Shown here in pieces: positions 39,001 to 41,915 of a stretch of 64,000 nucleotides of DNA. Positions within the stretch are counted from its first letter, which is position 1. Each line of letters begins with the position of its first letter. Position numbers and translations under genes: made by a program. This DNA comes from Octopus bimaculoides (Eukaryota). The notes below the pieces were generated by a model that was given only the letters and a program-made list of their open reading frames with translations, searched no databases and was not told the origin of the DNA. The stretch is from contig NC_068981.1 in assembly GCF_001194135.2 (NCBI RefSeq), forward strand, positions 2,312,437-2,376,436, in the 5' to 3' direction.

Positions 39001-41915
39001 TTATAGCACCTTCATATATCCGAATAATTGCCATTTCACCTTCAGGATGGATGACCACTTCTTGAACCTGAAACAGAAACAAGCCTGAAATTATTCAGAT
39101 GTACAAATACCTCCTTTTAAATAATAATGATAAGATTATTAACAACCAGCTTAAAAGCCGCAGTGAGTACATAATAAATTTTATTGAACTTGATCAATGT
39201 TTTTCAAGCAATGAACAGTTTTCATCAAAACAATGATATAATTTGTCAACTTGGAACTTATAGCAAACATTTTTTTTGTCTTTCCATTCAGGGGTCAGTA
39301 CAATTCCTTTTTTCTGTCTAACCTTTTCTCTCTCTCCCTCTTTCTGTTGATTGTTTCCACCCATCACCATCACCGGTGCCACCACCATCACCATCACCTC
39401 CGCCTCTATCACAACTACAGCTCATACTATTACTATCACCCCATTACCATGACAACCATCGATCTACAACTGTCTCTATGTCTACTATTACTCTCACCCC
39501 AACATGAGCAATAGTGGGAGTGTCAATGAATAGTGAGCAATGGGGTTGAAGTGTGACACACTGACACACAGAAATTAGTTTTCACATTTATTATATTAGA
39601 TAATAATAATGATGTCAAATTTTGGAACAAGATCAGCACTTTCAGGAGAGGGGGAGGGGCTAAGTCAATCACATTGACCCCTGTGTTCAACTGGTATTTA
39701 TTTTATCAACCTCTGAAAGGATGGAAAGCAAAGTCGACCCCGGCAGCATTTGAACTCAGAAAGTGAAGACAGAACAGATGAAATGCCACTAAGCACATTT
39801 TGCTCGGCATGCTAACAATTCTGCCATCTCATCAGTAATTAGTGAAAGATTGGCTGGGTTAATGAAAAGATTGAAGAGAAGAAAGATGTAGCTATCAAGA
39901 TGCTGAATGCCTTAGAATCAATAAGACCTCTTTAGATATTTGAAATAAATGAAAAAGAAAAAAAAAAATCTTCAACCAGTTTGGACTTGATATCACTAAC
40001 TCATACATTCGTCAATCCAACATGCAACACAGATTCACACCACCACCATCAGCCACCACACTAGCAACAAACATTATTCAACAATACATAATGACTTCAA
40101 CAACAACAAAACACTCTGTTTTACATTATCTTAATTTCTTTTGATACAAGCAAAGCACTGGACTCCATCTCTATTTTTTAAAATTGTTTTAATCAGAAGG
40201 AAAGGCAGTATCTGTGACCAATTTCAGGACCTTTGAGACTGGTGTATGAGGAGGGAGGTTTGCTCAAACCAGAAACTCTGCCTAAATGCTTTCAACAATT
40301 GTTGATTCCTCTAACCTTTAGGCATTTAACACAAAGCGTGATGGGCCACAATTGTGGCCATCAGGCACAGGTCAACAGGCCCCGATCATGGCCCAGATAG
40401 ATGTTTTTAATTTATGGGCGTTTGTTGAGGTCTAATGTCACTCAAATGCTCCAATATCCACCAGAATGCAAGAGGACTAATAGTTCAACTAATGACTTTT
40501 CAGATGAGGTAAAACTTGCCACCATTATATACTAAGCAGATACATTATTTAAATTTGACGGATATTTGTCCTCATCTTGTTTGTTGTTAACACAACGTTT
40601 CGGCTGATATACCCTCCAGCCTTCATCAGGTGTCTTGGGGAAATTTCGAACCTGGGTTCTCATTCCTAAGGTATCCCATGGGCATATGGCGTAGTAGTTA
40701 AGAGCATGGGCTACTAACCCAAGGTTCCGAGTTTAATTCCAGACAGTGACCTGAATAATAATAATATCGAAAAATACCGTAAGAATGAGAACCCGGGTTT
40801 GAGATTTCCCCAAGACACCTAATGAAGGCTGGAGGGTATATCAGCCGAAACGTTGTGCTAACAACAAACAAGATGAGGACAAATATCCATCGAATGTAAA
40901 TAATGTACATAATTCCTCATCTCTTAAATATAGAACTGACTAAGAAGATATTTTAACTATTTTTTTGTTTCTTGAGTGGGCATGGTAGTCTCATTTTCAT
41001 AAAATGTCCTCAGCAGCCCATGCAATGTAAGTGCCAATCCCAGCGCTTTATGAGTTAAACTAACATAACTGGCCCAAATATTCTAGCCTCTCACCTATCT
41101 TAAAAATAAACAGCCACATCATCAATGTTTCAAAGTTATGAGATAATGTCTGATTAATTCAAAACAATGTGAATAAATAAGCATTATATTTGACAGTGTA
41201 ATTTGAATGGTAAAGGATTAAAGGTACCCAAAGTGCAACGTAGTGGGGTTAAACGGGAGGGGTGTGTGAGATATTAACCCTTTAGCATTCAGATTAAATT
41301 GTATTATAATTCTAATTTATTGACATTGTCTTGAATGAATCAAGCATTTTCTTGTGCCTTCAAGATTTTGATGATGTGATTGTATGTTTTTAGAAGGATG
41401 TTGTAAGGTAGTTGTGAGAGACCCAATCTGGCTGCTCTGAACGTAAAACAGGTGGAGTATTTTGGTTGCATTTCATCATCAGCATCATTTAATGTCTGCT
41501 TTCCATTCTAGCATGGGTTGGACGGTTTGACTGGGGACTGGCGAACCAGATGGCTACACCAGACTCCAATCTGATCTGGCAGAGTTTCTACAGCTGGAAG
41601 CCCTTCCTAATGCCAACCACTCTGAGAGTGTAGTGGGTGCTTTTACGTGCTACCACAGAAACTATATGTTGAGATTTTACAGCACATTGCTCTACTTGTA
41701 GGCTATGGTAACGTGTCAACGATTATGGAAATGTGAAATGTAATAATAGCAATTACTCACCTCACCTTTAGCCAACATATCATAGTAAAACTCATTCCAA
41801 GAGATGAAGTGATATACACTAGAATCGGTCCCACTTATAAGTCGAAGCATTGTGTAACTAGCAACAATCATTCCAACCCAAATGAAAAGACGTGGAAACA
41901 TGGGAATCTTATCAT
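11888..41915 (-). CDS. SPG7: Paraplegin (mitochondrial m-AAA/FtsH-family metalloprotease), span of confidently reconstructed exons; 5' end not resolved
   Basis: 15 exons join in frame with GT-AG sites. They give [16 protein letters not shown], a TM segment, [11 protein letters not shown], Walker A GPPGCGKT, Walker [19 protein letters not shown], HExxH (HECGH), MALGGRAAE and [14 protein letters not shown] and IYIDEID match SPG7 rather than AFG3L2 (GPPGTGKT, ILFIDEID). Confidence 0.93.
13568..13787 (+). mobile_element. piggyBac-type MITE; other copies 26386-26607, 32873-33094, 55858-56077(-), partial ~20045-20103 and ~26265-26358, diverged ~16440-16668
   Basis: TTAA-CCCTTTCGTTAC...GTAACGAAAGGG-TTAA termini with a conserved ~220-bp body. 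Confidence 0.85.
15229..15885 (+). mobile_element. Non-LTR retroelement 3' segment ending in (AAT)n
   Basis: Non-coding body flanked by and ending in (AAT)n runs. Assignment rests on the tail only. Confidence 0.45.
15973..16050 (-). CDS. SPG7: SPG7 exon: [26 protein letters not shown]
   Basis: actttcag acceptor, TTG|gtgagc donor, 78 bp, phase 0 to 0. Confidence 0.92.
16696..16856 (-). CDS. SPG7: SPG7 exon: [54 protein letters not shown]
   Basis: tgttttag acceptor, GAG|gtaatg donor, 161 bp, phase 1 to 0. Confidence 0.94.
17136..17208 (-). CDS. SPG7: SPG7 exon: [24 protein letters not shown]
   Basis: cctttag acceptor, CTG|gtaaga donor, 73 bp, phase 0 to 1. LGGRxAE peptidase M41 motif. Confidence 0.94.
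17880..18200 (-). mobile_element. Possible decayed LINE RT C-terminal fragment
   Basis: KKYF.SE.LLS.Y..Q and AVVHKH resemble post-RT segments of Jockey/CR1-group LINEs; heavily degraded. Confidence 0.35.
18954..19037 (-). CDS. SPG7: SPG7 exon: [28 protein letters not shown]
   Basis: ctctccag acceptor, GAG|gtacgg donor, 84 bp, phase 0 to 0. Confidence 0.93.
19505..20010 (+). mobile_element. Dispersed (GGT)-rich repeat, probably a non-autonomous Helitron; inverted copy ~39255-39600
   Basis: The two copies align. The 39.6-kb copy begins A|TCTAATATAATAAATG on the minus strand. Confidence 0.55.
20982..21097 (-). CDS. SPG7: SPG7 exon with zinc-binding motif: [39 protein letters not shown]
   Basis: tttcaag acceptor, AAG|gtaacc donor, 116 bp, phase 1 to 0. 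HExxH. Confidence 0.94.
22337..22447 (-). CDS. SPG7: SPG7 exon: [37 protein letters not shown]
   Basis: tgttttag acceptor, TCG|gtcagt donor, 111 bp, phase 1 to 1. Confidence 0.94.
22493..22754. mobile_element. Foldback (hairpin) MITE-like element; partial copy ~25885-25978
   Basis: ~125-bp imperfect arms ATTTATCCCC...GGGGATAAAT around a ~10-nt loop. Confidence 0.8.
22805..23021 (-). mobile_element. tRNA-derived SINE family C; other copies ~4181-4396, 11535-11725, 18475-18845, 39620-39830, 48310-48530, 55640-55850
   Basis: B-box GAGTTCAAATTCC followed by GAGGTCRACTTTGCCTTTCATCCTTTCGGGGTCGATAAATTAAGTACCAG, which from memory resembles the Meta-SINE central domain. Confidence 0.8.
23700..23885 (+). 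mobile_element. Penelope-like LTR-type fragment with variant hammerhead motif; second copy ~63435-63550
   Basis: Shared GCGTAGGCTCGAAACGTAAAAGACTTTC (one substitution in the second copy). Two-copy consensus TCTTT-CTGTYGA-A-GAGC-gtag-GCTC-GAAA-CG-TA/AAAGA. Confidence 0.55.
23893..24140. mobile_element. Same element, inverted pair with most of the centre missing
   Basis: ~50-bp inverted tail end joined to a 5'-truncated plus arm lacking the tail. Imperfect 14-bp TSD TATATGTGCATGCA / TATATATACATGCA. Confidence 0.8.
26105..26270. mobile_element. TA-flanked MITE with CCRTATTTTAACGTGTATAAGG TIRs; second copy ~55357-55480
   Basis: Inverted termini ...CATACACGTTAAAACACGG-TA; pogo/Tc2-like end sequence. 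Confidence 0.65.
26690..26900 (+). mobile_element. RTE-clade LINE fragment
   Basis: [11 protein letters not shown] and [16 protein letters not shown] (Cys/His insert seen after the RT in some RTE elements). Confidence 0.55.
27355..27678 (+). mobile_element. Helentron/DINE-1-like non-autonomous element; related fragment ~30536-30710
   Basis: Subterminal CCTCTGCC, (CAAA)n microsatellite and terminal hairpin ACCTCCACCTTCGCTAAGGCAGAGGT. Confidence 0.6.
28055..28217 (-). CDS. SPG7: SPG7 exon: [54 protein letters not shown]
   Basis: ttttacag acceptor, CTG|gtatga donor, 163 bp, phase 0 to 1. Arginine-finger RPGRFDR. Confidence 0.95.
29632..30293. other. Assembly gap probably containing one SPG7 exon
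   Basis: The EQTLNQLLVEMDG...STNR..LD segment expected between Walker B and RPGRFDR was not found in the called sequence, and flanking phases (2 vs 0) do not join. Confidence 0.7.
30297..30405 (-). CDS. SPG7: SPG7 exon with Walker B: [36 protein letters not shown]
   Basis: ttttccag acceptor, AG|gta donor at the gap edge, 109 bp, phase 1 to 2. Confidence 0.95.
31231..31375 (-). CDS. SPG7: SPG7 exon with Walker A: [48 protein letters not shown]
   Basis: ctgtag acceptor, GAG|gtaact donor, 145 bp, phase 0 to 1. Confidence 0.96.
32635..32784 (-). CDS. SPG7: SPG7 exon: [50 protein letters not shown]
   Basis: ttttcag acceptor, AAG|gtaaaa donor, 150 bp. FKDVAG..EAK.E..EFVDYL motif. Confidence 0.95.
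33826..33931 (-). CDS. SPG7: SPG7 exon: [35 protein letters not shown] (TM2)
   Basis: ttatccag acceptor, TTT|gtaagt donor, 106 bp, phase 2 to 0, hydrophobic TM segment. Confidence 0.87.
37044..37171 (-). CDS. SPG7: SPG7 exon: [42 protein letters not shown]
   Basis: tttcaatag acceptor, AG|gtaagt donor, 128 bp, phase 0 to 2. FEEK.R.AE..L.I....I.VSY.R motif of m-AAA intermembrane domains. Confidence 0.9.
38987..39067 (-). CDS. SPG7: SPG7 exon: [27 protein letters not shown]
   Basis: tgtttcag acceptor, CCA|gtcagt donor, 81 bp, phase 0 to 0, matching the next exon. Confidence 0.85.
40543..40938. mobile_element. Same element, inverted pair with left arm missing its head, 12-bp TSD
   Basis: TSD ACTAAGCAGATA (40531-40542) / ACTAAGAAGATA (40939-40950). 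The 33-bp tail (40906-40938) is on the right arm only. Confidence 0.88.
40589..40634 (-). ncRNA. Minimal type I hammerhead ribozyme motif (intact copy)
   Basis: GACAC-CUGAUGA-A-GGCUG-gagggtatat-CAGCC-GAAA-CG-UU/GUGUU: stem I GACAC/GUGUU, 5-bp stem II, palindromic ACGU in place of stem III. Confidence 0.72.
41761..41915 (-). CDS. SPG7: SPG7 exon: [51 protein letters not shown]
   Basis: ttcttcag acceptor, GAG|gtgagt donor, 155 bp, phase 1 to 0. TM1 plus ISWNxF..MLAKGE motif. Confidence 0.92.

What the first reader, a model, noticed from the sequence alone, without database searches (positions are those of the whole stretch)
40543..40938. tRNA-headed SINE carrying a minimal hammerhead ribozyme: candidate Penelope-mobilised ribozyme SINE
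Seen: a ~260-bp unit at six loci (23.9, 40.5, 43.3, 51.2, 51.7, 60.2 kb). It runs from a tRNA-like head (A-box TGGCGTAGTGG, B-box GAGTTCGATTCC) through an (AAT)n linker and GACAC-CTGATGA-A-GGCTG-loop-CAGCC-GAAA-CG-TT/GTGTT to a fixed tail ending AAATATAGAACTG. The sense strand has no T4 run, compatible with Pol III read-through. Established: Penelope-like elements carry minimal type I hammerheads whose palindromic helix III acts in dimers. An extra A after A9 occurs in a natural viroid hammerhead, and Schistosoma Sm-alpha repeats pair a Pol III promoter with a hammerhead. Inference: a non-autonomous element fusing a tRNA promoter to a Penelope-type terminal repeat. Most SINEs borrow LINE tails instead. 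I cannot tell whether it is already catalogued.
Basis: partly seen in the sequence, partly recalled or inferred. Interest (0 to 1): 0.92.

Follow-up and report, generated by a model that had tools for sequence, protein, structure and literature searches.

The report
Octopus tRNA-SINE with Penelope-type hammerhead tail
This is a short, abundant octopus retroposon with a tRNA-like promoter head and a 3' half that carries a Penelope-type minimal hammerhead motif, and its insertions look like Penelope-like-element insertions rather than LINE-driven ones, which is unusual for a SINE but not yet proven.

Summary
A 269-bp consensus unit occurs as 10 copies at six loci. It has a tRNA-like head, an (AAT)n linker, a minimal type-I hammerhead motif and a fixed tail. 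Peptide matches place the window in Octopus bimaculoides.

Four of the six loci, including the reported one, are head-to-head inverted dimers. The upstream inverted copy is variably 5'-truncated and always stops at ...AAATAATGT(A). Every forward copy runs 31 nt further. Target-site duplications of 8-12 bp flank the whole dimer at three of the four.

An inverted 5'-truncated partner, a roughly 30-bp tail at one end only, and a hammerhead in the terminal module are the published hallmarks of Penelope-like element (PLE) integration. LINE-driven integration does not give this pattern.

The hammerhead matches the PLE minimal-hammerhead descriptor and is far beyond chance. Most genomic copies carry inactivating mutations, and cleavage is untested. 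Rfam and ARAGORN recognise neither the head nor the ribozyme.

No autonomous PLE partner could be retrieved, and Repbase/Dfam could not be queried. I rate it a new variant of known kinds (Sm-alpha-like ribozyme SINEs, non-autonomous PLE derivatives). Interest about 0.6.

The parts
40541..40674 (-). Inverted partner copy (I40). It is 5'-truncated at consensus position 105 and lacks the last 31 nt. It carries an intact hammerhead motif at 40589-40634.
   Evidence: Inverted repeat of 134 nt, 93% complementary. 98.5% identity to the consensus 3' module. Alignment. Descriptor hit.
40680..40938 (+). Full-length forward copy (F40), from the tRNA-like head to the tail.
   Evidence: blastn to consensus positions 1-269, 90% identity. 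Sequence.
40687..40740 (+). Pol III-type internal promoter region. A box TGGCGTAGTAG at 40687-40697; decayed B box GAGTTTAATTCC at 40729-40740.
   Evidence: In the consensus the A box is at position 8 and the B box at position 52, 44 nt apart. The head motif matches 6 times against 0.02 expected.
40814..40859 (+). Minimal type-I hammerhead motif: helix I GACAC/GTGCT, core CTAATGA (mutated G5 to A in this copy), extra A, helix II GGCTGG/TCAGCC, GAAA, palindromic ACGT, then U17. The predicted cleavage site is after 40854.
   Evidence: Sequence. Intact versions of the motif at 40629(-), 51283(-) and 51575(+) are the only such hits apart from one unrelated one; shuffles give 0.015 hits. The features match the PLE min-HHR description.
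40871..40922 (+). 3' stem-loop AGATGAGGA...TCCTCATCT (9 bp). Its loop holds the end point of the tail-less copies, taken here as the internal reverse-transcription start.
   Evidence: Inverted repeat I2. Stem present in the MFE and centroid folds, z = -1.9. No covariation is available.
40908..40938 (+). 31-nt tail CATAATTCCTCATCTCTTAAATATAGAACTG. It is present on 6 of 6 forward copies and 0 of 4 inverted copies.
   Evidence: MAFFT alignment of the 10 copies. End points at consensus 238-242 against 269. The last 15 nt are nearly invariant.
40531..40540 (.). Left target-site duplication ACTAAGCAGA.
   Evidence: TSD scan, 9 of 10 identical with 40939-40948.
40939..40948 (.). Right target-site duplication ACTAAGAAGA.
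43297..43808 (+). Second inverted dimer. I43 is 43297-43551 (minus, nearly full length, tail-less) and F43 is 43541-43808. The two overlap at a CATATG palindrome. The dimer sits in a (TA)n tract with TATATATA on both sides.
51164..51659 (-). Third inverted dimer. F51a is 51164-51433 (minus, 96% identity to consensus, intact hammerhead). I51 is 51436-51659 (plus, internal deletion in the head, tail-less). A perfect 12-bp TSD AGGTTTCTTTTC lies at 51660-51671 and 51151-51162.
23893..24146 (-). Fourth inverted dimer. The forward copy is reduced to its last 50 nt including the tail (23893-23942, minus). The inverted tail-less copy is 23941-24146 (plus).
   Evidence: The TSD is ambiguous in TG/TA-rich flanks.
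51748..51988 (-). Solo forward copy (F51b). It is old (86% identity), has a deletion in the hammerhead, and has no clear TSD.
60225..60491 (-). Solo forward copy (F60). It is 86% identical to the consensus, has a 10-nt deletion that removes the CTGAT of the hammerhead core, and has no clear TSD.

Best explanation
This is a family of tRNA-derived, non-coding short retroposons of Octopus bimaculoides, with a 269-bp consensus. Its 3' ~165 nt is a Penelope-like-element (PLE) terminal module, and I propose that a PLE reverse transcriptase / GIY-YIG endonuclease copies it in trans rather than a LINE.

Proposed cycle:
1. Inferred from the boxes: Pol III starts at the element's first base, 7 nt upstream of the A box. 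It reads through the T4-free body and stops at the first T-run in the flank, 9-103 nt downstream.
2. Inferred by analogy with the Anolis PLE biochemistry: the PLE protein binds the 3' stem-loop region and starts reverse transcription internally, at one of two sites 31 nt apart. This is why read-through 3' flank is never copied.
3. Shown as an insertion pattern: one DNA strand receives a forward copy that ends with the 31-nt tail. The other strand receives an inverted copy that starts at the internal site (tail-less) and is usually 5'-truncated. The two meet head-to-head, and staggered nicks leave an 8-12 bp TSD around the whole unit.
4. The hammerhead (helix I 5 bp, helix II 6 bp, extra A after A9, no helix III, palindromic ACGU) is inherited from the PLE module. 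As a monomer it should be inactive. It could cleave after GAAACGUU only as a dimer. Whether it cleaves, or instead serves as a protein-recognition fold, is not known.
For: Copy structure and end points:
- 10 copies at 6 loci.
- All 4 inverted copies end at consensus 238-242, and all 6 forward copies end at 269. The split of 0/4 against 6/6 for tail presence gives Fisher p of about 0.005 (my arithmetic).
- TSDs flank whole dimers: 12/12, 9/10 and 8/8.
- Junctions are palindromic.

Published PLE hallmarks match point for point:
- An inverted 5'-truncated copy adjacent to the 5' end, plus a 30-40 bp tail at one end only (Craig 2021).
- A 31-bp tail, 9-bp TSD and palindromic junctions in Adineta PLEs.
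- Two adjacent internal RT start sites that define the tail, with cleavage and extension of both DNA strands (Frangieh 2024).

Hammerhead:
- The descriptor gives 4 hits against 0.015 per shuffle.
- The motif has the bulged nucleotide between A9 and 10.1, a G10.1-C11.1 pair, a long helix II, a short helix I and a palindromic 15.2-16.2, as listed for PLE min-HHRs. The same paper notes dual HHRs 100-700 bp apart on opposite strands.

Head: A box at position 8, B box at position 52, and global similarity to tRNAs with z = 6-7.

Other support:
- No poly(A), microsatellite or LINE-like 3' end, and no other window sequence shares the 3' module.
- PLEs are reported as recently active in Octopus genomes, and most octopus SINE families are unclassified.
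Against: - No autonomous PLE with a matching pLTR, hammerhead or tail was found. Peptides translated from the 3' module hit only three O. bimaculoides gene models that have absorbed SINE fragments. A PLE RT query returned no octopus protein among its top 120 hits, and those RTs have no tblastn match in the window.
- The head is not recognised as tRNA by ARAGORN or Rfam, and its predicted fold is not a cloverleaf.
- Only 3 of 9 hammerhead copies pass the descriptor. One of those three (I51, 51575+) lacks GTT, which puts G at position 17. There is no compensatory variation in helices I or II or in the 3' stem.
- The double-hammerhead dimer is not the predicted minimum-energy state: -24.3 against -27.2 kcal/mol for two monomers.
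- The two solo copies lack clear TSDs.
- The sample is six loci from a single 64-kb window.
Confidence: 0.75

Rival explanations
1. It is an ordinary LINE-mobilised tRNA SINE. The hammerhead-like string has no functional meaning, and the inverted dimers arise by LINE-type twin priming or by chance adjacency in a SINE-dense genome.
For: SINEs are the largest TE class in octopus, and LINEs (RTE, CR1, Dong-R4) are abundant. Most hammerhead copies are mutated. No PLE partner was found.
Against: - There is no A-rich or simple-repeat 3' end, and nothing else in the window shares the tail.
- In twin priming the two segments come from different, essentially non-overlapping parts of one RNA (background knowledge). 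Here the arms duplicate the same 134-250 nt.
- Chance adjacency cannot explain four inverted copies ending at the same consensus position 31 nt short of the forward end, nor TSDs that flank whole dimers.
- The hammerhead descriptor is expected 0.015 times per window.
Confidence: 0.08
2. It is a non-autonomous PLE derivative (a solo-pLTR or retrozyme-like element) that happens to carry a tRNA-derived fragment. It is transcribed by Pol II or by read-through, not from the A/B boxes. On this reading it is PLE-mobilised but is not a true Pol III SINE.
For: The PLE insertion signatures are the same as in the best explanation. PLE pLTRs can mobilise unrelated captured sequences in trans. tRNA models do not recognise the head.
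Against: - The element's 5' end sits exactly 7 nt upstream of the A box, and A and B boxes are at tRNA positions 8 and 52.
- All full-length copies start at the same GGGCATATGG.
- The sense strand has no T4 run.
- There are no tandem direct repeats of the kind retrozymes form.
Confidence: 0.12
3. It is a DNA transposon of the foldback or MITE type, and the 134-250 bp inverted arms are its terminal inverted repeats.
For: Long inverted arms with a short spacer, flanked by TSDs, at four loci.
Against: - Arm length differs at every locus: the inverted copy starts at consensus 105, 4, 51 (or 1 with an internal deletion) and 34.
- The 31-nt tail lies outside the repeat on one side only.
- Two loci are single forward copies.
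- TSD length varies from 8 to 12 bp.
- The arms carry different sequence variants.
Confidence: 0.02
4. The inverted arrangement is an artefact, a palindromic mis-join in a gap-rich short-read assembly.
For: The window has 2379 N and many microsatellite-flanked gaps. PLE structures are known to trouble short-read assemblies.
Against: There are four independent loci. Their arms are only 92-95% identical to each other and carry different variants. Junctions differ between loci, and matching TSDs lie in unique flanking sequence.
Confidence: 0.02

Closest known systems
Minimal hammerheads of Penelope-like elements (Cervera & de la Pena 2014; Lunse, Weinberg & Breaker 2017)
   Same: Type-I topology with no helix III and a palindromic 15.x/16.x (ACGU) that implies action as a dimer. 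Extra nucleotide between A9 and 10.1, G10.1-C11.1 pair, helix II longer than 4 bp, helix I of 5 bp. Thousands of dispersed copies per genome. Pairs of motifs 100-700 bp apart on opposite strands.
   Different: Here the motif sits in a 269-bp element headed by a tRNA-like Pol III promoter, not in the pLTR of an RT/EN-coding element. In the papers I read, dispersed min-HHRs are interpreted as truncated PLEs, with no mention of a tRNA head.
Sm-alpha / Sj-alpha SINE-like retroposons of Schistosoma (Ferbeyre 1998; Laha 2000)
   Same: A short non-coding retroposon that combines a Pol III promoter with a hammerhead (summarised).
   Different: According to the review, Sm-alpha occurs largely in tandem arrays and its hammerhead cleaves multimeric transcripts in cis or trans. 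The octopus element is dispersed as solo copies or inverted dimers, and no tandem direct repeats are present. It has a helix-III-less min-HHR and shows PLE-type tail and inverted-copy signatures. Sequence relatedness could not be tested because no Sm-alpha sequence was available.
Animal non-LTR retrozymes, proposed non-autonomous PLE derivatives (Cervera & de la Pena 2020; Li, Clavereau & Pollet 2026 preprint)
   Same: Short, non-coding, hammerhead-bearing, and thought to borrow PLE machinery.
   Different: Retrozymes are tandem direct repeats that yield circular RNAs. Invertebrate retrozymes usually carry canonical type-I hammerheads with a stable helix III, and no Pol III head is described. 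None of these traits is seen here.
Autonomous PLE insertions (Penelope/Poseidon, Neptune, Nematis; Adineta Pen2a; Anolis PAc)
   Same: Inverted 5'-truncated copy adjacent to the 5' end, a 30-40 bp (31-bp in Adineta) tail at one end only, TSDs of about 8-12 bp, a palindrome at the inverted junction, and a hammerhead a few tens of nt upstream of the RT start sites.
   Different: There is no RT/EN ORF and no direct pLTR pair. A tRNA-like promoter replaces the pLTR promoter.
Classical tRNA-derived SINEs, including octopus OK/OR1/OR2 and the Deu-type SINE abundant in this window
   Same: A tRNA-related head with A and B boxes, about 270 bp long, dispersed at high copy number.
   Different: Classical SINEs end in a LINE-derived tail or in an A-rich or simple repeat. 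This element ends in a fixed unique sequence and shows PLE-type insertion structure. It shares no sequence with the Deu-type SINE copies in the window. Identity with OK/OR1/OR2 could not be tested.
TRIMp3 elements (Cassandra, Helenus, Ajax; Kojima 2024)
   Same: A Pol III-type small-RNA promoter grafted onto the cis-acting ends of a retroelement class other than LINEs.
   Different: Those use LTRs, a PBS and a PPT, and depend on LTR retrotransposons. This element would be the PLE-dependent counterpart.

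Membership tests
Hammerhead ribozyme (type I, PLE minimal variant) | Conserved core C3-U-G-A-U-G-A9 and G12-A-A-A15.1. | tested here: met
   Present in the consensus. CTGATGA is intact in 6 of 9 copies, and 3 copies pass the full descriptor. F40, F43 and F60 are mutated or deleted in the core.
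Hammerhead ribozyme (type I, PLE minimal variant) | Helix II closed by G10.1-C11.1, and helix I formed by the sequences flanking the core. | tested here: met
   Helix II GGCUGG/UCAGCC (6 bp) and helix I GACAC/GUGUU (5 bp).
Hammerhead ribozyme (type I, PLE minimal variant) | A non-G nucleotide at position 17 (the cleavage site), preceded by the A15.1-U16.1 pair. | tested here: inconclusive
   U17 is present in the GAAACGUU|G variant (5 copies). Three copies (I51, I23, F60) lack GTT, which puts G at position 17. F51b is deleted across this site.
Hammerhead ribozyme (type I, PLE minimal variant) | PLE-specific traits: an extra nucleotide between A9 and 10.1, no helix III, and a palindromic 15.2-16.2. 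| tested here: met
   Extra A and ACGU palindrome are present. The traits are listed.
Hammerhead ribozyme (type I, PLE minimal variant) | Match to curated hammerhead covariance models. | tested here: not met
   No Rfam hammerhead family matches at gathering score or at E<=10. This is expected for a motif without helix III, so it carries little weight.
Hammerhead ribozyme (type I, PLE minimal variant) | Compensatory base changes in the helices across copies. | tested here: not met
   The changes seen break pairs and none restore them. All copies derive from one young family, so the test has little power. A second, unrelated min-HHR at 45618-45670 has a wholly different 8-bp helix II with the same core and bulge.
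Hammerhead ribozyme (type I, PLE minimal variant) | Site-specific self-cleavage. | not testable with these tools
   Thermodynamics only: the double hammerhead is at -24.3 kcal/mol against -27.2 for two monomers.
PLE-mobilised (non-autonomous Penelope-like) element | An inverted 5'-truncated copy immediately adjacent to the 5' end of the insertion. | tested here: met
   Seen at 4 of 6 loci.
PLE-mobilised (non-autonomous Penelope-like) element | [quoted passage not shown] | tested here: met
   A 31-nt tail on 6 of 6 forward copies and 0 of 4 inverted copies.
PLE-mobilised (non-autonomous Penelope-like) element | A target-site duplication enclosing the whole (inverted plus forward) unit. | tested here: met
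   12/12, 9/10 and 8/8 at three dimers. The fourth dimer is ambiguous, and the two solo copies show none.
PLE-mobilised (non-autonomous Penelope-like) element | Terminal module homologous to the pLTR or 3' end of an autonomous PLE in the same genome. | not testable with these tools
   No octopus genome or TE library is searchable. The indirect attempts failed.
PLE-mobilised (non-autonomous Penelope-like) element | Insertion bias for microsatellite-like targets. | tested here: inconclusive
   TATATAC lies within 35 nt upstream of all 4 dimers, against 4.2% of window positions. The motif was chosen post hoc and n = 4.
SINE (Pol III-transcribed short retroposon) | Internal Pol III promoter derived from a small RNA gene at the 5' end. 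| tested here: met
tRNA detectors are negative.
SINE (Pol III-transcribed short retroposon) | 3' end shared with a partner LINE, or an A-rich or simple-repeat tail. | tested here: not met
   The 3' end is the unique sequence ...CTTAAATATAGAACTG. There is no A-rich or repeat tail, and nothing else in the window is similar.
SINE (Pol III-transcribed short retroposon) | Actual Pol III transcription. | not testable with these tools
   The only available facts are that the body has no T4 run and that T4 runs lie 9-103 nt downstream.
Animal non-LTR retrozyme | Head-to-tail tandem repeats bounded by hammerheads, giving circular RNA. | tested here: not met
   No direct repeats at the locus. All loci are solo copies or inverted dimers.
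Sm-alpha / Sj-alpha family | Sequence homology to the schistosome elements. | not tested

The most novel reading that the evidence does not exclude
This would be the first clearly documented SINE family whose autonomous partner is a Penelope-like element rather than a LINE: a tRNA promoter fused to a PLE hammerhead and RT-entry module. It is abundant in Octopus, at about one locus per 10 kb in this window. Because PLE integration builds head-to-head inverted dimers, each insertion would be a ready-made 130-250 bp dsRNA hairpin. That could contribute to the exceptionally high dsRNA potential and A-to-I hyper-editing reported for O. bimaculoides. The two arms of a dimer carry different sequence variants, which hints that a dimeric PLE complex copies two separate RNA molecules in one integration event.
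Probability: 0.35. Interest if true: 0.8.

Novelty: new variant of a known kind. Interest (0 to 1): 0.6.

Why it matters
SINEs are defined operationally as parasites of LINEs. Kojima (2024) extended Pol III-promoter elements to LTR retrotransposons. A tRNA-headed element that rides on Penelope-like machinery would fill the remaining retroelement class.

It would also give PLE research a small, abundant natural substrate of about 165 nt. That substrate contains the hammerhead, the stem-loop and both reverse-transcription start sites, which suits dissection of the still poorly understood PLE integration mechanism.

In octopus, SINEs are the largest TE class, and 893 of the 900 recently active SINE families reported for O. 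vulgaris are unclassified. A PLE partnership could explain part of that gap.

The built-in inverted dimers are obvious candidates for the long near-perfect dsRNAs that underlie the extreme hyper-editing of O. bimaculoides transcripts.

Fragments of the element are already exonised in annotated octopus gene models. One of these uses the AUG inside the ribozyme core as its annotated start codon.

Tried and rejected
Detector searches:
- Rfam at gathering threshold over the whole window found nothing. Rfam at E<=10 on two loci gave no tRNA or hammerhead match. The only sub-0.01 hit (MIR5380, 51404-51465) is just the palindromic head-to-head junction.
- ARAGORN on the window and on the consensus head, with relaxed thresholds, found nothing.

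Search for the PLE partner:
- Translated 3'-module peptides matched only three O. bimaculoides gene models with absorbed SINE fragments.
- One of those proteins is not on record as a gene product. The other gene spans more than 100 kb, so no DNA was returned.
Those 120 have no tblastn hit in the window.

Collection scans:
- A metagenome scan for the hammerhead 20-mer found nothing.

Literature:
- A full-text search for six diagnostic sequence strings found no paper.
- Lunse 2017, Ferbeyre 1998 and Albertin 2015 are not held.

Other tests:
- Covariation in the 3' stem and in the hammerhead helices: no compensatory changes.
- My first attempt to score a double hammerhead used a crossing structure and was invalid. 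It was redone correctly.

Rejected explanations: MITE or foldback transposon, assembly artefact, LINE twin priming, and chance adjacency (see the rival explanations).

Full report
OBSERVATION

The region 40541-40938 was read directly and compared with the rest of the window. blastn with the locus as query, and later with a consensus, finds related sequence at exactly six loci: 23893-24146, 40541-40938, 43297-43808, 51164-51659, 51748-51988 and 60225-60491. Identity to the consensus is 86-98%, with E-values down to 1e-101.

- Head motif: 6 matches against 0.02 expected.
- Tail motif: 11 against 3.3.
- Hammerhead string: 11 against 4.4.

A MAFFT alignment of all copies gives a 269-bp consensus. 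It consists of:
- a head, GGGCATATGGCGTAGTAGTTAAGAGCACGGGCTACTAACCCCAAGATTCCGAGTTCGATTCCAGGCAGTGACC;
- an (AAT)n linker;
- a ~45-nt spacer;
- GACAC-CTGATGA-A-GGCTGG-AGGGTATA-TCAGCC-GAAA-CGTT-GTGTT;
- a stem-loop;
- the end ...CTTAAATATAGAACTG.

The sense strand has no TTTT.

The repeat finder shows that the reported span is itself an inverted repeat. The arms 40541-40674 and 40774-40907 are 134 nt long, 93% complementary and 99 nt apart. The same holds at 43.3-43.8 kb, 51.16-51.66 kb and 23.9-24.1 kb.

Four of the six loci are therefore head-to-head dimers of a forward copy and an upstream inverted copy, giving 10 copies in all. The inverted copy is 5'-truncated to a different extent at each locus. 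It starts at consensus position 105, 4, 51 (or 1 with an internal deletion) and 34.

Its other end is constant. All four inverted copies stop at ...AAATAATGT(A), consensus 238-242. All six forward copies continue for 31 more nucleotides, CATAATTCCTCATCTCTTAAATATAGAACTG.

Target-site duplications flank the whole dimer rather than each copy:
- AGGTTTCTTTTC, 12/12, at 51.2-51.7 kb.
- ACTAAG[C/A]AGA, 9/10, at 40.5 kb.
- TATATATA at 43.3 kb.

The junctions are palindromic. At 43.5 kb the two copies overlap on CATATG. At 51.4 kb Rfam even scores the junction as a spurious miRNA hairpin.

The two solo copies are the oldest, at 86% identity, and have no clear TSD.

ORGANISM

Peptides translated from the 3' module match three Octopus bimaculoides gene models at 70-92% identity and match nothing else. 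One maps to assembly GCA_001194135.2. The window is therefore from O. bimaculoides or a very close relative.

THE HEAD

The A box (TGGCGTAGTAG or TGGCGTAGTGG, depending on the copy) starts at element position 8. The B box (AGTTCGATTCC) starts at position 52. These are the positions the boxes occupy in a tRNA, and the spacing is 44 nt.

Because those sequences come from memory, this is a lead and not a test. It does not identify the parent tRNA.

ARAGORN does not recognise the head, even with relaxed thresholds. The Rfam tRNA model does not match even at E<=10. The predicted fold is not a cloverleaf. The head is a tRNA-derived promoter remnant and not a tRNA.

In the forward copy at the reported locus the B box has decayed to GAGTTTAATTCC.

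THE HAMMERHEAD

I scanned both strands with a descriptor: CTGATGA, an optional extra nucleotide, a hairpin of at least 4 bp, then GAAA. It finds four hits in the window against 0.015 per shuffled window.

Three hits are copies of this element, at 40629(-), 51283(-) and 51575(+). The consensus has a 5-bp helix I (GACAC/GUGUU), a 6-bp helix II closed by G10.1-C11.1, an unpaired A between A9 and G10.1, no helix III, a palindromic A15.1-C-G-U16.1, and U17.

Cervera & de la Pena list these same non-descriptor features as characteristic of the minimal hammerheads of Penelope-like elements. They also report pairs of such motifs 100-700 bp apart on opposite strands.

Several cautions apply:
- Most genomic copies carry disabling changes. 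F40 has CTAATGA, F43 has CCGATGA, I43 has a broken helix II, I23 has G10.1 changed to T, and F51b and F60 have deletions. Three copies lack GTT, which puts G at position 17. This is what neutral decay of dead copies would produce.
- No compensatory substitutions are seen.
- Rfam hammerhead models do not match. That is expected for a helix-III-less motif.
- Nearest-neighbour energies put the double hammerhead at -24.3 kcal/mol against -27.2 for two separate monomers. It is feasible but not favoured.
- Published PLE min-HHRs cleave poorly in vitro. The hammerhead is dispensable for PLE insertion in vitro.

The ribozyme is thus a well-supported motif with unproven activity.

HOW IT MOST LIKELY MOVES

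The insertion architecture matches what has been described as unique to PLEs:
[quoted passage not shown] 2021).
- Adineta vaga PLEs have a 31-bp tail, a 9-bp TSD, an inverted pLTR shorter than the direct one, and palindromes at the inverted junction (Arkhipova et al. 2013).
- A purified Anolis PLE protein nicks and extends both DNA strands. It starts reverse transcription at two adjacent internal sites of the RNA, and the sequence between those sites is the tail (Frangieh et al. 2024).

The octopus element fits this point for point. It has two alternative 3' end points 31 nt apart, one used by the forward copy and one by the inverted copy. Both lie in or beside a 9-bp stem-loop, AGAUGAGGA...UCCUCAUCU. 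The hammerhead lies 46-77 nt upstream.

Internal initiation would also explain how a Pol III transcript that must read into flanking DNA to find a T-run, 9-103 nt downstream, is nevertheless copied with a precise 3' end.

LINE twin priming does not fit, because the arms duplicate the same sequence rather than adjoining segments. A MITE or foldback does not fit either, because arm length varies, the tail is one-sided, and solo copies exist.

WHAT COULD NOT BE SHOWN

I found no autonomous PLE sharing the module:
- The protein database holds no octopus PLE ORF that begins with the peptide encoded by the module.
- A PLE RT query returned thousands of PLE RTs, but none of those listed is from Octopus.
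- The listed RTs have no tblastn match in the window.
- Collection scans were either down or empty.

Repbase and Dfam are not available here. A full-text search for six diagnostic strings found nothing.

The octopus TE papers I read report SINEs as the largest TE class, mostly unclassified, and PLEs as recently active. They do not mention hammerheads.

COMPARISON WITH KNOWN SYSTEMS

Functionally the element combines two known things. One is the Pol III-promoter-plus-hammerhead design of schistosome Sm-alpha. The other is the idea that hammerhead-bearing short repeats are non-autonomous PLE derivatives.

It differs from Sm-alpha and from retrozymes. It is dispersed as solo copies or inverted dimers rather than in tandem arrays, and it carries the helix-III-less PLE variant. 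It differs from classical SINEs in lacking any LINE-type or A-rich tail. It is the PLE counterpart of Kojima's Pol III-promoter LTR elements.

I therefore rate it a new variant of known kinds. It is not categorically new. The family consensus itself is probably present, unclassified, in existing octopus repeat libraries.

SIDE OBSERVATIONS

- A second, unrelated PLE-type minimal hammerhead lies at 45618-45670. It has an 8-bp helix II and an extra G after A9. A 34-nt palindromic junction precedes it, and it is inserted into a mariner-like MITE.
- Within each dimer the two arms are no more similar to each other than to copies elsewhere, and they carry different, partly non-CpG, diagnostic variants. 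This hints at two RNA templates per integration, but n = 3.
- All four dimers have TATATAC within 35 nt upstream, against 4.2% of background positions. The motif was chosen post hoc.
- O. bimaculoides is reported to have an exceptionally high fraction of loci able to form long near-perfect dsRNA, and the strongest hyper-editing signal among the species surveyed. These built-in hairpins are plausible contributors. That link is my inference.

VERDICT

Ribozyme activity, Pol III transcription and the identity of the partner remain to be shown. Confidence in the PLE-mobilised tRNA-SINE explanation is 0.75, and interest is 0.6.

Noticed in passing
window 45583-45670 (+), within 45459-45700: A second, unrelated PLE-type minimal hammerhead: AACAC-CTGATGA-G-ATGGACAT-GACCT-ATGTCCAT-GAAA. 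It has an 8-bp helix II and an extra G after A9. It is preceded by a 34-nt palindromic junction (45583-45616) and appears to have inserted into a mariner-like deletion derivative. It is not repeated elsewhere in the window.
   Followed up: partly
window 45459-45588 and 43077-43281: Two copies (76% identical) of a mariner-like MITE with terminal inverted repeats GGGGTGCTG(G/A)AAAGTTCC... and a remnant of a transposase C-terminus. The 43.1-kb copy lies immediately upstream of the 43.3-kb SINE dimer.
   Followed up: partly
about 50 blastn hits to 45756-45898 across the whole window, e.g. 6143-6213, 20487-20648, 31581-31743, 35514-35677, 42470-42632, 45177-45288, 52281-52448: A different and much more abundant SINE (...GTTAGGAAGGGCATCCAGCTGTAGAAAC...GATTGGAGCCTGG..., often ending in (GAT)n). 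From memory it resembles Deu-domain SINEs. It accounts for the recurrent peptide [17 protein letters not shown] in many listed ORFs. It shares no sequence with the hammerhead SINE.
   Followed up: partly
loci 40541-40938, 43297-43808, 51164-51659: The inverted and forward arms of one insertion are not each other's closest relatives (91.7-95.4% identical). They carry different diagnostic variants that are shared with copies at other loci. For example, F43 and F51a share TCTGTCAAATGTAAACAATGTAAAT, and F40 and I51 share CCATCGAAT. This suggests two different RNA templates per integration event, but some of the sites are CpG and the sample is small.
   Followed up: partly
upstream flanks of 23893-24146, 40541, 43297 and 51659: All four dimers have TATATAC or a TA-rich microsatellite within 35 nt of the insertion point, against 4.2% of window positions. 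This may be a target preference like the microsatellite bias reported for some PLEs. The motif was chosen post hoc.
   Followed up: partly
proteins P0001-P0003 (O. bimaculoides gene models): SINE fragments are exonised in annotated proteins. LOC128249831 isoform X2 starts [25 protein letters not shown], so its annotated start codon is the AUG inside the CUGAUGA ribozyme core. A short dystrobrevin beta isoform X1 model contains the frame-1 peptide [24 protein letters not shown].
   Followed up: partly
window 51404-51465: The Rfam hit to MIR5380 (E=0.007, far below its gathering score) is only the palindrome formed by the two tRNA-like heads meeting head-to-head. It is not a miRNA.
   Followed up: yes
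window about 2.3-3.0 kb, 29.6-30.3 kb, 35.1-35.5 kb and 61.4-61.8 kb: Four assembly gaps totalling 2379 N. At least two of them (2.3-3.0 kb and 61.4-61.8 kb) are flanked by TA/CA/GA microsatellites, which is typical of a short-read draft assembly.
   Followed up: no
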